DNA of 64,000 bases from Pecten maximus (taxonomy: Eukaryota). The position numbers were made by a program, and so were the translations under genes. Numbering within the stretch: position 1 is the first letter of the stretch; every line of letters begins with the position of its first letter. Shown here piece by piece: positions 58,680 to 59,798 of the stretch. The notes beneath the pieces are model-generated. The model searched no databases. It worked only from the letters and a program-made list of their open reading frames with translations, and had not been told where the DNA came from. Location of the stretch: contig NC_047025.1 in the NCBI RefSeq assembly GCF_902652985.1, positions 28,520,001 through 28,584,000 of the forward strand, read 5' to 3'.

Positions 58680-59798
58680 CATACCGCTGTTTCTTCCTTC
58701 TATAGGGGCTCGTCAGTGATGTTAGGGACATCATACCGCTGTTTCTCCCTTCTAGGGACTCGTCAGTGATGTTAGGGACATAATACAGCTGTTTCTTCCT
58801 TCTAGGAGCTCGTTAGTGATGATAAGGACATCATACAGCTGTTTCTTCCTTCTAGGGACTCGTCAGTGATGTTAGGGACATCATACCGCTGTTTCTTTCT
58901 TCTAGGAGCTCGTCAATGATGCTTAAGACATCATATATGTTTGGGGGGGGGGGGGGGGGGTGTTTTGTTTTGTTTTGTTTTTTTCCTTCTTGGGGCTCGA
59001 CACTGATGATAAGAACATCATACAGCTGTTTTCTCCTTCTACGGGCTCGTCAGTGATGATAAGGACATCATACCGCCGGTTTTTTTTCTTCTAGGGGCTC
59101 GTCAGTGATGCTATAGACATCATACAGTTTGTTTGTTTTGGTTTTTGGTTTTTTTTTTCGAGGGGTTTTCTTCTTTTCTGGGGCTCGTCAGTGATGTTAG
59201 GGACATCATACCGCTGTTTCCTCCTTCTAGGAGCTCATCAGTAATGCAATAGCGATCGAAAAGGTTGGGGGTGTTTTGGGGGGGGGGGGGGGGGGGGGGT
59301 TGTTTTTTTCTTGGGGCTCGTCAGTGATGATAAGGACATCATACAGCTGTTTCTTCCTTCTAGAGGCTCCTCAGTAAAATCTGCATTTATCACATGATTT
59401 GTTTTCCTTGATTCTCGGCTGGAGACATCATACAGCTGTTTCGTCTGCTAAGACTCGTCAGTGATGATTAGGACATCATACAGCTGTTTCGACCTTCGAG
59501 CACTTTTCAGTCATGCTAGGTGCATCATTTAGCTGATTCGTGATTGCTAGGGGCATCACACAGCTACTTTGTCCTTCTATGACTCGCCAGTGATGCTAGG
59601 GACATCACATAGCTGTTTTGTCCTTCTATGACTCGTCAGTGATGCTAAAGACATCATATATCTTTTTAGTCCTTCTAGGGCTCGTCAGTGATGCTAAAGA
59701 CATCATATATCTTTTTGGTCCTTCTACGACTCATCGGTGATGCTAAGGACATCATACAGCTGTTTCGTCCTTCTAGGTCTCGTCAGTGATGCTACGGA
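58680..59798 (-). repeat. Tandem array 2 of a 49-50-bp hammerhead-ribozyme unit (~20 copies, with poly-G/T interruptions)
   Basis: Same family and orientation as array 1. Period 50 at 58680-58930 and 49 at 59550-59790. Confidence 0.9.
59432..59487 (-). ncRNA. Intact hammerhead ribozyme (type III fold; overlapping type I fold at 59426-59466)
   Basis: ACAGCUGU A^UGAUG UCCUAAU CAUCA CUGACGA GUCU UAGC AGAC GAA ACAGCUGU. All core nucleotides present. Stem I 5 bp, stem II 4 bp, stem III 8 bp, all Watson-Crick. Confidence 0.85.

What the first reader, a model, noticed from the sequence alone, without database searches (positions are those of the whole stretch)
59426..59487. Dual topology: tandem context turns a weak type I hammerhead into a well-formed type III
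Seen: stem III is the palindrome ACAGCUGU. Within one unit (type I, 59426-59466) it gives only a 2-3 bp hairpin. The 7-nt linker closes stem I (UGAUG-UCCUAAU-CAUCA), so the palindromes of adjacent units can pair into a perfect 8-bp stem III, giving a type III fold at 59432-59487. Predicted cuts are at 59479/59478 and 59431/59430, releasing a 48-nt monomer. Stem II here is GUCU/AGAC versus consensus GUCC/GGAC, a compensatory change. Established: palindromic short stem III hammerheads cleave as dimers, and type III folds are typical of plant viroids, satellites and retrozymes rather than animals. Inference: loop 1 begins with U and consensus loop 2 ends in GAA, so a loop-loop tertiary contact is possible.
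Basis: partly seen in the sequence, partly recalled or inferred. Interest (0 to 1): 0.8.

Follow-up and report, generated by a model that had tools for sequence, protein, structure and literature searches.

The report
Hammerhead ribozyme unit in tandem array
This is one still-intact copy in a decayed array of 49-letter self-cutting RNA (hammerhead) units; neighbouring copies can pair into a stronger fold, which is a compact form of the known "double hammerhead", and nothing shows this copy is in use.

Summary
On the minus strand, 59487-59426 reads palindrome ACAGCUGU, A, cut site, UGAUG, 7-nt loop, CAUCA, CUGACGA, GUCU/UAGC/AGAC, GAA, ACAGCUGU, A, cut site, UGAUG. The 56-nt stretch folds as a closed three-way junction. 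The 41-nt type I version does not fold as a hammerhead.

- The type III fold is the intramolecular form of the known double hammerhead. It arises because the repeat period (49 nt) equals the ribozyme, so a 7-nt loop joins the stem I strands of neighbouring units.
- Single-unit copies of the same dispersed element have an ordinary open stem I.
- Consensus units elsewhere in the genome pass Rfam's type I model. This unit passes neither the type I nor the type III threshold.
- The family is large: about 2,000 exact junction motifs in the 918-Mb genome.
- Copies show no convincing excess of compensatory changes.
- The GUCU/AGAC stem II occurs once in the genome.
- The neighbour upstream has a dead core, so release of a 48-nt monomer here is doubtful.
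- No listed run holds this locus.

The scan's first readers noted the same 49-nt arrays on other DNA of this genome.

Verdict: a new variant (spacer-less array) of a known kind, and probably a neutral relic at this locus.

The parts
59480..59487 (-). Upstream palindrome ACAGCUGU. It is the 5' strand of the 8-bp inter-unit stem III and belongs to the neighbouring, inactive unit.
   Evidence: Sequence read; paired in the minimum free energy fold.
59478..59479 (-). First predicted cut site (A17 at 59479, cut 59479/59478). This is the site served by the type III fold.
   Evidence: Rfam type III alignment.
59462..59478 (-). Stem I hairpin: UGAUG, 7-nt loop UCCUAAU, CAUCA.
   Evidence: The motif with exactly a 7-nt loop occurs 1,985 times in the genome.
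59455..59461 (-). Core box CUGACGA (C3 to A9).
59443..59454 (-). Stem II GUCU/AGAC with loop UAGC. This variant is unique in the genome.
59432..59442 (-). GAA of the core, followed by the unit's own palindrome ACAGCUGU (3' strand of the inter-unit stem III, or a 2-bp hairpin on its own).
59426..59431 (-). A17 and the second predicted cut (59431/59430), followed by UGAUG, which can close an open (type I) stem I with CAUCA 59466-59462. The array breaks after this.
   Evidence: Rfam type I scores 23.9 bits, below the threshold of 34.
59488..59527 (-). Body of the upstream neighbouring unit. Its core is dead (CUGAAAAG, G8 lost) and it has 7 differences from the consensus.
58682..59803 (-). Composite decayed hammerhead array of 19 detected units. 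The 49-nt type lies at 59431-59803 and a 50-nt 'GGAAGAAAC' type at 58682-59391, interrupted by poly-C and A-rich runs. Only 2 units keep an intact core.
58593..58681 (-). Conserved 3' arm of the dispersed element that carries the array.
   Evidence: nhmmer and HMM hits; the shared flank seen.
59804..59909 (-). 5' arm of the carrying element. It is diverged and its outer end is uncertain.
   Evidence: nhmmer hit 59750-59909; flank comparison.
48509..49093 (-). Second array of the same family, 10 kb away: 11 units, 3 with an intact core.
21276..21550 (+). Decayed single-unit copy of the same carrying element (arms plus one hammerhead, open stem I).

Best explanation
The feature is one surviving intact unit of a decayed minisatellite. 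Its 49-nt repeat unit is a complete, canonical metazoan hammerhead ribozyme of the Rfam type I kind, with an 8-nt palindromic stem III.

The arrays hold 4 to 40 units. They sit inside a dispersed, non-coding element of about 335 nt that has conserved 5' and 3' arms. Single-unit copies of that element carry an ordinary open-stem-I type I hammerhead.

In the arrays the repeat period equals the ribozyme. As a result, the two strands of stem I from consecutive units are joined by a 7-nt loop, and the palindromes of neighbouring units can pair into an 8-bp helix III. An intact core with an intact palindrome upstream is therefore predicted to fold, as soon as it is transcribed, into a closed three-way junction that is formally type III. 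This is the intramolecular version of the double hammerhead.

At this locus the fold would cut at 59479/59478 if the minus strand were transcribed. The second cut, at 59431/59430, has only the weak type I fold of the same core to rely on. I take this copy to be a neutral relic.

Shown: the sequence anatomy, the predicted folds, the family size, the lack of convincing covariation and the element context. Inferred: cleavage itself, the order of co-transcriptional folding, and neutrality.
For: - Anatomy and coordinates.
- Predicted fold: the type III fold is the minimum free energy structure for 56 nt and in a 141-nt context, and the 41-nt type I stretch misfolds.
- Rfam scores for this unit: type III 41.6 bits, type I 23.9 bits.
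- Rfam scores for the family: consensus units in intact arrays pass the type I gathering score (35.0-36.5 against 34).
- Family size: 976 intact core-plus-site motifs and 1,985 motifs of site, closed stem I and core start, against 0 in the reversed controls.
- Sample of 379 units from 20 arrays plus the window: 163 have an intact core, 119 are type III-competent with the upstream neighbour, 114 are type I-competent, and 87 are both.
- Real 3-4-unit stretches always use inter-palindrome duplexes in the minimum free energy fold.
- Evidence for neutral decay:
  - Standard pairs are about as frequent as expected under independence in every stem.
  - 88.8% of cells are paired, against 88.4 +/- 0.2% in shuffles.
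  - The stem II variant is unique.
  - 3 of 36 units with 6 differences from the consensus are still fully competent, so one survivor among 19 units needs no selection.
- Carrying element and open stem I in single-unit copies.
- Literature on dimeric and tandem hammerheads: PMC4209133, PMC6765202, PMC7761336.
Against: - No experiment or read evidence shows cleavage.
- Contigs from runs labelled with the same species, including one RNA-Seq library, carry family-like units. They do not carry this locus's arms or unique parts, and contigs cannot show RNA ends.
- The z-score of the 56-nt fold is modest (-1.86).
- In longer arrays each palindrome can pair with only one neighbour at a time. GGAC can also pair with the GUCC at the junction of stem I and loop 1. 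Predicted folds of multi-unit RNAs are therefore messy.
- All six differences of this unit from the consensus fall in loops or are compensated. That could hint at constraint.
- Pairs with changes on both sides are slightly more frequent than in shuffles (9 against 5.4; 18 of 500 shuffles reach this).
- My HMMs detected arms at only 9 of 24 arrays. By eye, 3' arms are present at about 14 of 24.
Confidence: 0.62

Rival explanations
1. One reading: the dual topology is a selected device. The tandem context switches a weak type I ribozyme into an efficient type III ribozyme helped by loop 1/loop 2 tertiary contacts, and this releases 48-49-nt monomers.
For: - The type III fold is the minimum free energy structure and the better Rfam score.
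- The 7-nt loop length is strictly kept in 1,985 copies.
- Some loop positions are as conserved as the core: U6, C7 and U10 of loop 1, and U29, A32 and A33 of loop 2, at 0.88-0.96. Others vary, at 0.32-0.81.
- Helix I of 5-6 bp and helix II of 4 bp match the geometry of natural hammerheads with loop-loop contacts (PMC4209133).
Against: - No convincing excess covariation in any helix.
- Array variants mostly break pairs rather than compensate.
- This unit's loop 2 is UAGC, not UAGAA.
- The upstream partner core is dead, so only one strongly supported cut exists here.
- The closed loop 1 is absent from single-unit copies. It therefore looks like a by-product of the duplication.
- No listed run holds this locus.
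Confidence: 0.15
2. DNA-level minisatellite only. The hammerhead module of a transposable element was amplified by slippage or unequal crossing-over, and the arrays are never processed as RNA. Only the single-unit type I ribozyme of the parent element ever mattered.
For: - Arrays behave like minisatellites. Variants that break pairs are spread within arrays, for example U.U or U.C at positions 10.2-11.2 and a 98-nt higher-order repeat in L020.
- Only 43% of units have an intact core, even in arrays that were chosen for containing intact motifs.
- Poly-C and A-rich runs grow inside units.
- Array boundaries are in constant phase next to the arms.
Against: - Hundreds of contigs from same-species runs, including a library on record as RNA-Seq, carry array-like units with high word depth. 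Family transcription is therefore plausible.
- Many arrays still hold runs of perfect units. If transcribed, these are predicted to fold as hammerheads.
Confidence: 0.18
3. Ultra-minimal retrozyme. Self-cleaved RNAs of 49 nt (or a few units) are circularised and copied by rolling-circle reverse transcription, using a Penelope-like element's enzyme. This would generate the arrays.
For: - The unit runs exactly from cut site to cut site.
- The genome has at least 150 GIY-YIG hits with open frames up to 929 aa, which indicates many Penelope-like elements.
- Animal retrozymes are proposed to spread through circular RNAs and Penelope-like elements (PMC7229834, PMC7761336, bioRxiv 10.64898/2026.07.22.740005).
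- Some copies of the carrier element lie head to tail (L038, L053).
Against: - Most arrays sit between the same two arms in the same phase. That fits in-situ expansion better than independent insertion of array cDNAs.
- No reverse transcriptase ORF lies within about 4 kb of 20 arrays.
- No 49-nt RNA has been shown.
- 49 nt is far below any described retrozyme, which range from 150 to 400 nt.
Confidence: 0.05

Closest known systems
Double hammerhead of dimeric transcripts (Forster et al. 1988, as cited and drawn in PMC4209133 Fig. 1A and PMC6765202)
   Same: Stem III is short and palindromic and is unstable in a monomer. Two copies pair their stem III sequences into one extended helix that supports cleavage. 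A tandem arrangement supplies the partner.
   Different: Here the spacer between the two ribozymes is only the 7-nt loop 1. One of the two active sites is therefore a fully closed, formally type III hammerhead of 56 nt. In newt or viroid dimers the copies lie hundreds of nucleotides apart.
Rfam RF00163 Hammerhead_1, the metazoan satellite type I hammerhead (newt, Schistosoma, cave cricket)
   Same: Nearly the same core and stem II consensus (CUGACGAGUCC...GGACGAAAC) and an 8-nt palindromic stem III. Consensus units of this family pass the gathering score.
   Different: The unit of the finding scores 23.9 bits, below the threshold of 34. The repeat period is 49 nt, not 150-400 nt.
Non-LTR retrozymes of animals (PMC7229834, PMC7761336)
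   Same: Non-coding tandem repeats with one type I hammerhead per unit. GC content is low to moderate (0.42-0.48 in the array). They co-occur with Penelope-like elements in the genome. The carrier element of about 335 nt sometimes lies head to tail.
   Different: Described units are about 150-400 nt and give circular RNAs. Here the amplified unit is the bare 49-nt ribozyme nested inside the larger element. No circular RNA has been shown.
Minimal hammerheads of Penelope-like elements (PMC4209133; Lunse et al. 2017, cited in PMC6765202, not held in the library)
   Same: Stems I and II are closed by loops, helix III forms only between two copies, and the motifs are thought to work as dimers in tandem layouts.
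   Different: Those motifs lack helix III nucleotides, have a long helix II (6-8 bp) with a bulged base, and lie in pseudo-LTRs next to an RT/GIY-YIG ORF. This family has a 4-bp helix II and an 8-nt palindrome. No RT ORF lies within about 4 kb of 20 arrays.
Rfam RF00008 Hammerhead_3 (viroids, satellite RNAs, plant retrozymes)
   Same: The same formal topology: helix III open, helices I and II capped. This is the best-scoring Rfam model for this unit (41.6 bits, E = 2.6e-7).
   Different: The score is below the gathering threshold (48.5). The topology arises from tandem duplication of a type I motif in an animal genome, not from a viroid-like or plant element.

Membership tests
Hammerhead ribozyme (general) | Conserved core CUGANGA ... 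GAAA, with A15.1-U16.1 and a non-G nucleotide at position 17 | tested here: met
   CUGACGA 59461-59455, GAAA 59442-59439, U 59432 followed by A 59431. The upstream site has U 59480 followed by A 59479.
Hammerhead ribozyme (general) | Three helices around the core | tested here: met
   Helix I has 5 bp, helix II 4 bp and the inter-unit helix III 8 bp in the minimum free energy fold. Within one unit, helix III has only 2 bp.
Hammerhead ribozyme (general) | Site-specific self-cleavage | not testable with these tools
   Contigs cannot show RNA ends. This needs in vitro transcription or end-specific sequencing.
Rfam RF00163 Hammerhead_1 | Score at or above the gathering threshold (34 bits) | tested here: not met
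   This unit scores 23.9 bits. Consensus units of the same family in L011, L016 and L019 score 35.0-36.5 bits and do pass.
Rfam RF00008 Hammerhead_3 | Score at or above the gathering threshold (48.5 bits) | tested here: not met
   41.6 bits, E = 2.6e-7 at 59433-59486(-).
Double hammerhead | A self-complementary stem III sequence and a second copy close by on the same transcript | tested here: met
   Two perfect ACAGCUGU palindromes lie 48 nt apart and are paired in the minimum free energy fold.
Double hammerhead | Two functional cores that share the extended helix III | tested here: not met
   At this locus the upstream core is CUGAAAAG, with G8 lost. The feature is met in intact arrays elsewhere.
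Non-LTR retrozyme | Tandem units of about 150-400 nt, each with one type I hammerhead | tested here: inconclusive
   The period is 49 nt. The carrier element of about 335 nt with one hammerhead fits the size range and is sometimes found head to tail.
Non-LTR retrozyme | Expressed as circular RNA monomers | not testable with these tools
   Only contigs were available, and no listed run holds this locus.
Penelope-like element hammerhead | Location in a pseudo-LTR beside an RT/GIY-YIG ORF | tested here: not met
   ORFs of 150 aa or more around 20 arrays show no RT or GIY-YIG domain. The genome does hold at least 150 GIY-YIG hits, but those loci could not be fetched.

The most novel reading that the evidence does not exclude
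The spacer-less arrays are ultra-minimal retrozymes. Each 49-nt unit cuts itself out co-transcriptionally through the inter-unit (type III) fold. The product is then ligated into a circle of about 49 nt, or a small multiple of that, and copied by rolling-circle reverse transcription by a Penelope-like enzyme. This would make it the smallest known self-processing mobile RNA.
Probability: 0.06. Interest if true: 0.8.

Novelty: new variant of a known kind. Interest (0 to 1): 0.35.

Why it matters
If array transcripts really process themselves through the inter-unit fold, this family would be a natural case of one hammerhead sequence working in two circular permutations. It would also bring the smallest described animal hammerhead repeat down from about 150 nt to 49 nt. 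That bears on how retrozymes and satellite DNAs arise from one another.

For this locus the practical message is more modest. The fold is real on paper and is explained by known double-hammerhead logic. The copy looks like a relic. The 'compensatory' stem II and the loop-loop contact should not be used as evidence of function.

Tried and rejected
- A fuzzy-regex unit search timed out. I replaced it with nhmmer.
- RNAalifold on 114 junction-permuted units gave no consensus structure. I used explicit pair counts instead.
I counted competence in the fetched sample instead.
- Two metagenome pattern scans found nothing. The collections at hand hold no other mollusc genomes, so conservation in related species could not be tested.
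- The paper of Lunse, Weinberg and Breaker on dimeric hammerheads of Penelope-like elements is not held. A search for hammerhead plus scallop found nothing relevant.
- No RT or GIY-YIG ORFs lie near 20 arrays.
A link to Penelope-like elements therefore stays open. By eye, none of the GIY-YIG hits listed on contigs C1-C3 lies within 5 kb of the hammerhead hits listed.
- No listed sequencing run holds this locus. Laying contigs at 80% likeness showed only family-level matches on the units and zero depth on both arms.
- My arm HMMs under-detect the arms (9 of 24 arrays) compared with inspection by eye.
- I considered a SINE-like reading of the 5' arm because of a B-box-like 'GGTTCAGAAT'. I dropped it for lack of an A box or a tail.

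Full report
**1. What is there**

- ACAGCUGU (59487-59480), then A 59479, then the first cut site;
- UGAUG, the 7-nt loop UCCUAAU, and CAUCA;
- the core box CUGACGA;
- stem II GUCU/AGAC with loop UAGC;
- GAA, a second ACAGCUGU (59439-59432), A 59431, the second cut site, and UGAUG (59430-59426).

The two predicted cuts lie 48 nt apart.

The motif is not a chance match:
- A core-plus-site pattern occurs 5 times in the window, against none in 100 shuffles.
- Rfam's type III model matches 59433-59486(-) with 41.6 bits and E = 2.6e-7.
- In the whole 918-Mb assembly, the intact core-plus-site pattern occurs 976 times. The pattern of site, stem I closed by exactly 7 nt, and core start occurs 1,985 times. 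The reversed controls give none.

**2. The two folds**

ViennaRNA folds the 56-nt stretch 59432-59487(-) into exactly the proposed three-way junction: an 8-bp helix III between the two palindromes, a 5-bp helix I hairpin and a 4-bp helix II hairpin. The energy is -15.6 kcal/mol, and 5 of 200 shuffles fold as well. The same fold survives in a 141-nt context.

The 41-nt type I stretch does not fold as a hammerhead at all.

Covariance-model scores agree. For this unit the type III model gives 41.6 bits and the type I model 23.9 bits. Both are below their gathering scores of 48.5 and 34.

The structural observation and the label 'weak type I, well-formed type III' are therefore confirmed as predictions.

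**3. The surroundings**

The unit lies in a composite, decayed array at 58682-59803(-):
- A 49-nt type at 59431-59803.
- A break of about 50 nt.
- A 50-nt type with GGAAGAAAC at 58682-59391. This part is interrupted by poly-C and A-rich runs that always sit at the 3' side of stem II.

Of 19 detected units only two keep an intact core. The unit of the finding is the only one with a perfect inter-unit fold. Its upstream neighbour reads CUGAAAAG, so G8 is lost. Downstream of the unit the array breaks.

A second array of the same family lies at 48509-49093(-).

Genome-wide, the arrays I fetched hold 4 to 40 units. Most of them sit between a conserved 5' arm and a conserved 3' arm. Copies with a single hammerhead define an element of about 335 nt. 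Some copies lie head to tail (L038, L053).

In single-unit copies the sequence upstream of CAUCA has no UGAUG partner. Stem I is therefore open and the ribozyme is an ordinary type I hammerhead. The closed loop 1, and with it the type III topology, exists only where the 49-nt module has been duplicated in tandem.

Consensus units in intact arrays pass Rfam's type I gathering score (35.0-36.5 bits against 34). That Rfam consensus itself draws stem III as four pairs with no loop, which is an 8-nt palindrome.

**4. Is there evidence of selection for the fold?**

I extracted 379 units from 20 arrays plus the window.
- Stems, core and palindrome are 0.81-0.96 identical to the consensus.
- The variable positions are four in loop 1 and two in loop 2.
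- In every helix the number of standard pairs equals what independent columns would give. Double changes are at chance level.

I then ran the pair-count tool on 114 junction-permuted sequences (alignment A1; counts).
- 88.8% of cells are paired, against 88.4 +/- 0.2% in shuffles (50 of 500 shuffles reach the observed value).
- Nine pairs have a change on both sides, against 5.4 in shuffles (18 of 500).
- This is marginal at best.

Variants that spread within arrays mostly break pairs.

The GUCU/UAGC/AGAC stem II occurs once in the genome. Relative to the consensus it also carries a 1-nt deletion and an A-to-C change. It is a singleton, not a recurrent compensatory change.

Units with six differences from the consensus are still fully competent in 3 of 36 cases. 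One survivor among 19 units therefore needs no selection.

**5. Expression**

No listed run holds this locus's words.

I laid the contigs of four same-species runs at 80% likeness. Three are only guessed to be RNA, and one is on record as RNA-Seq. Between 201 and 962 contigs per run lie on the hammerhead units. Depth is zero on both arms and on the spacers, and most contigs are under 95% alike.

This shows that family-like sequence is present in those runs. It says nothing about this locus, and contigs cannot show cleavage ends.

**6. Mechanism**

The best-supported reading is the intramolecular double hammerhead.

During transcription of an array, the stem I hairpin and then the stem II hairpin form first. 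When the next palindrome emerges it can pair with the previous one and complete a closed ribozyme. That ribozyme cuts behind the previous palindrome. This order of events is inferred from the sequence order and from the predicted folds.

Two limits follow from the anatomy:
- Each palindrome can pair with only one neighbour at a time.
- GGAC can also pair with the GUCC at the junction of stem I and loop 1. This is why the predicted folds of 3-4-unit RNAs are messy outside the palindrome duplexes.

At this locus only the cut at 59479/59478 has a sound fold behind it. Release of a 48-nt monomer would need the same core to refold into the weak type I form.

The loop-loop idea cannot be tested with these tools. 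At the family level, U6, A32 and A33 are among the most conserved loop positions. This unit's loop 2, however, is UAGC.

**7. Comparison with what is known**

The literature I could read states three relevant things:
- Metazoan type I hammerheads have a 1-2-bp helix III with a palindromic loop, and they act as dimers when a second copy is near. The tandem case is drawn explicitly (PMC4209133, PMC6765202, PMC7761336).
- Type III is typical of plants and viroid-like RNAs (PMC7761336).
- Animal retrozyme units are about 150-400 nt (PMC7229834, PMC7761336).

The principle is therefore known. The unusual point is the period of 49 nt, with nothing but the ribozyme in the unit. I found no paper describing such arrays. 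One key paper was not available.

The genome holds many Penelope-like ORFs. I found none next to 20 arrays and could not fetch more DNA to test the link.

First readers of this scan noted the same 49-nt arrays on other pieces of this genome. None of those notes had been followed up.

**8. Verdict**

- It is a new variant (spacer-less array) of a known kind. The carrier element, the arrays and the ribozyme all belong to known classes.
- This copy is probably a neutral relic.
- Interest is moderate to low for this locus. It would be higher for the family if RNAs of 49 nt were shown.

Noticed in passing
window 58931-58991, 59127-59160, 59263-59316: Poly-G/poly-C and (CAAAA)n-like runs interrupt the 50-nt 'GGAAGAAAC' units. 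They always sit at the same place in the unit, the 3' side of stem II and the GAAA box, as if microsatellites grew out of the purine-rich AGAAGGAAGAAA stretch.
   Followed up: partly
L020:3998-4840 (G000:C3:3310797-3311639): This array is a 98-nt higher-order repeat in which palindromes ACAGCUGU and AAAGCUGC alternate. The variant puts C at position 16.1, so every second site is dead. This looks like DNA-level homogenisation without regard to ribozyme function.
   Followed up: partly
loci L037-L055; window 21276-21550(+) and about 62520-62700(+): A dispersed non-coding element of about 335 nt carries 0, 1 or up to 40 hammerhead units between conserved arms. The 5' arm contains '...aatttattgaattatgggg...' and the 3' arm contains '...tttggctcta...aactctcaatttg...'. 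It is sometimes head to tail. By eye there is a second type of 5' flank ('tttgatttcc...cact'). Its transposition mechanism is unknown.
   Followed up: partly
G000, genome-wide: At least 150 GIY-YIG (PF01541) matches, a capped count, with open frames up to 929 aa. This suggests many Penelope-like elements, some possibly intact. The loci could not be fetched.
   Followed up: no
window 63163-63234 (-): A tRNA-His (GTG) gene: 62.3 bits in Rfam, confirmed by ARAGORN.
   Followed up: yes
window 43122-45702; 56120-56854; 15083-15363; 52422-52921: Other minisatellites in the window: 43 nt x 60 copies, 37 nt x 21, 92 nt x 3.1 (99% identical) and 21 nt x 24. None contains a hammerhead core.
   Followed up: no
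all units, e.g. window 59471-59475 with 59443-59446: GUCC occurs twice per consensus unit, at the junction of stem I and loop 1 (AUGUCC) and in stem II (GAGUCC). GGAC therefore has two possible partners. In multi-unit folds this gives alternative, non-hammerhead pairings.
   Followed up: partly
G000 as a whole: The assembly size (918,306,378 bases) and contig count (3,983) match my recollection of the published king scallop (Pecten maximus) assembly. This rests on memory only and was not verified with any tool.
   Followed up: no
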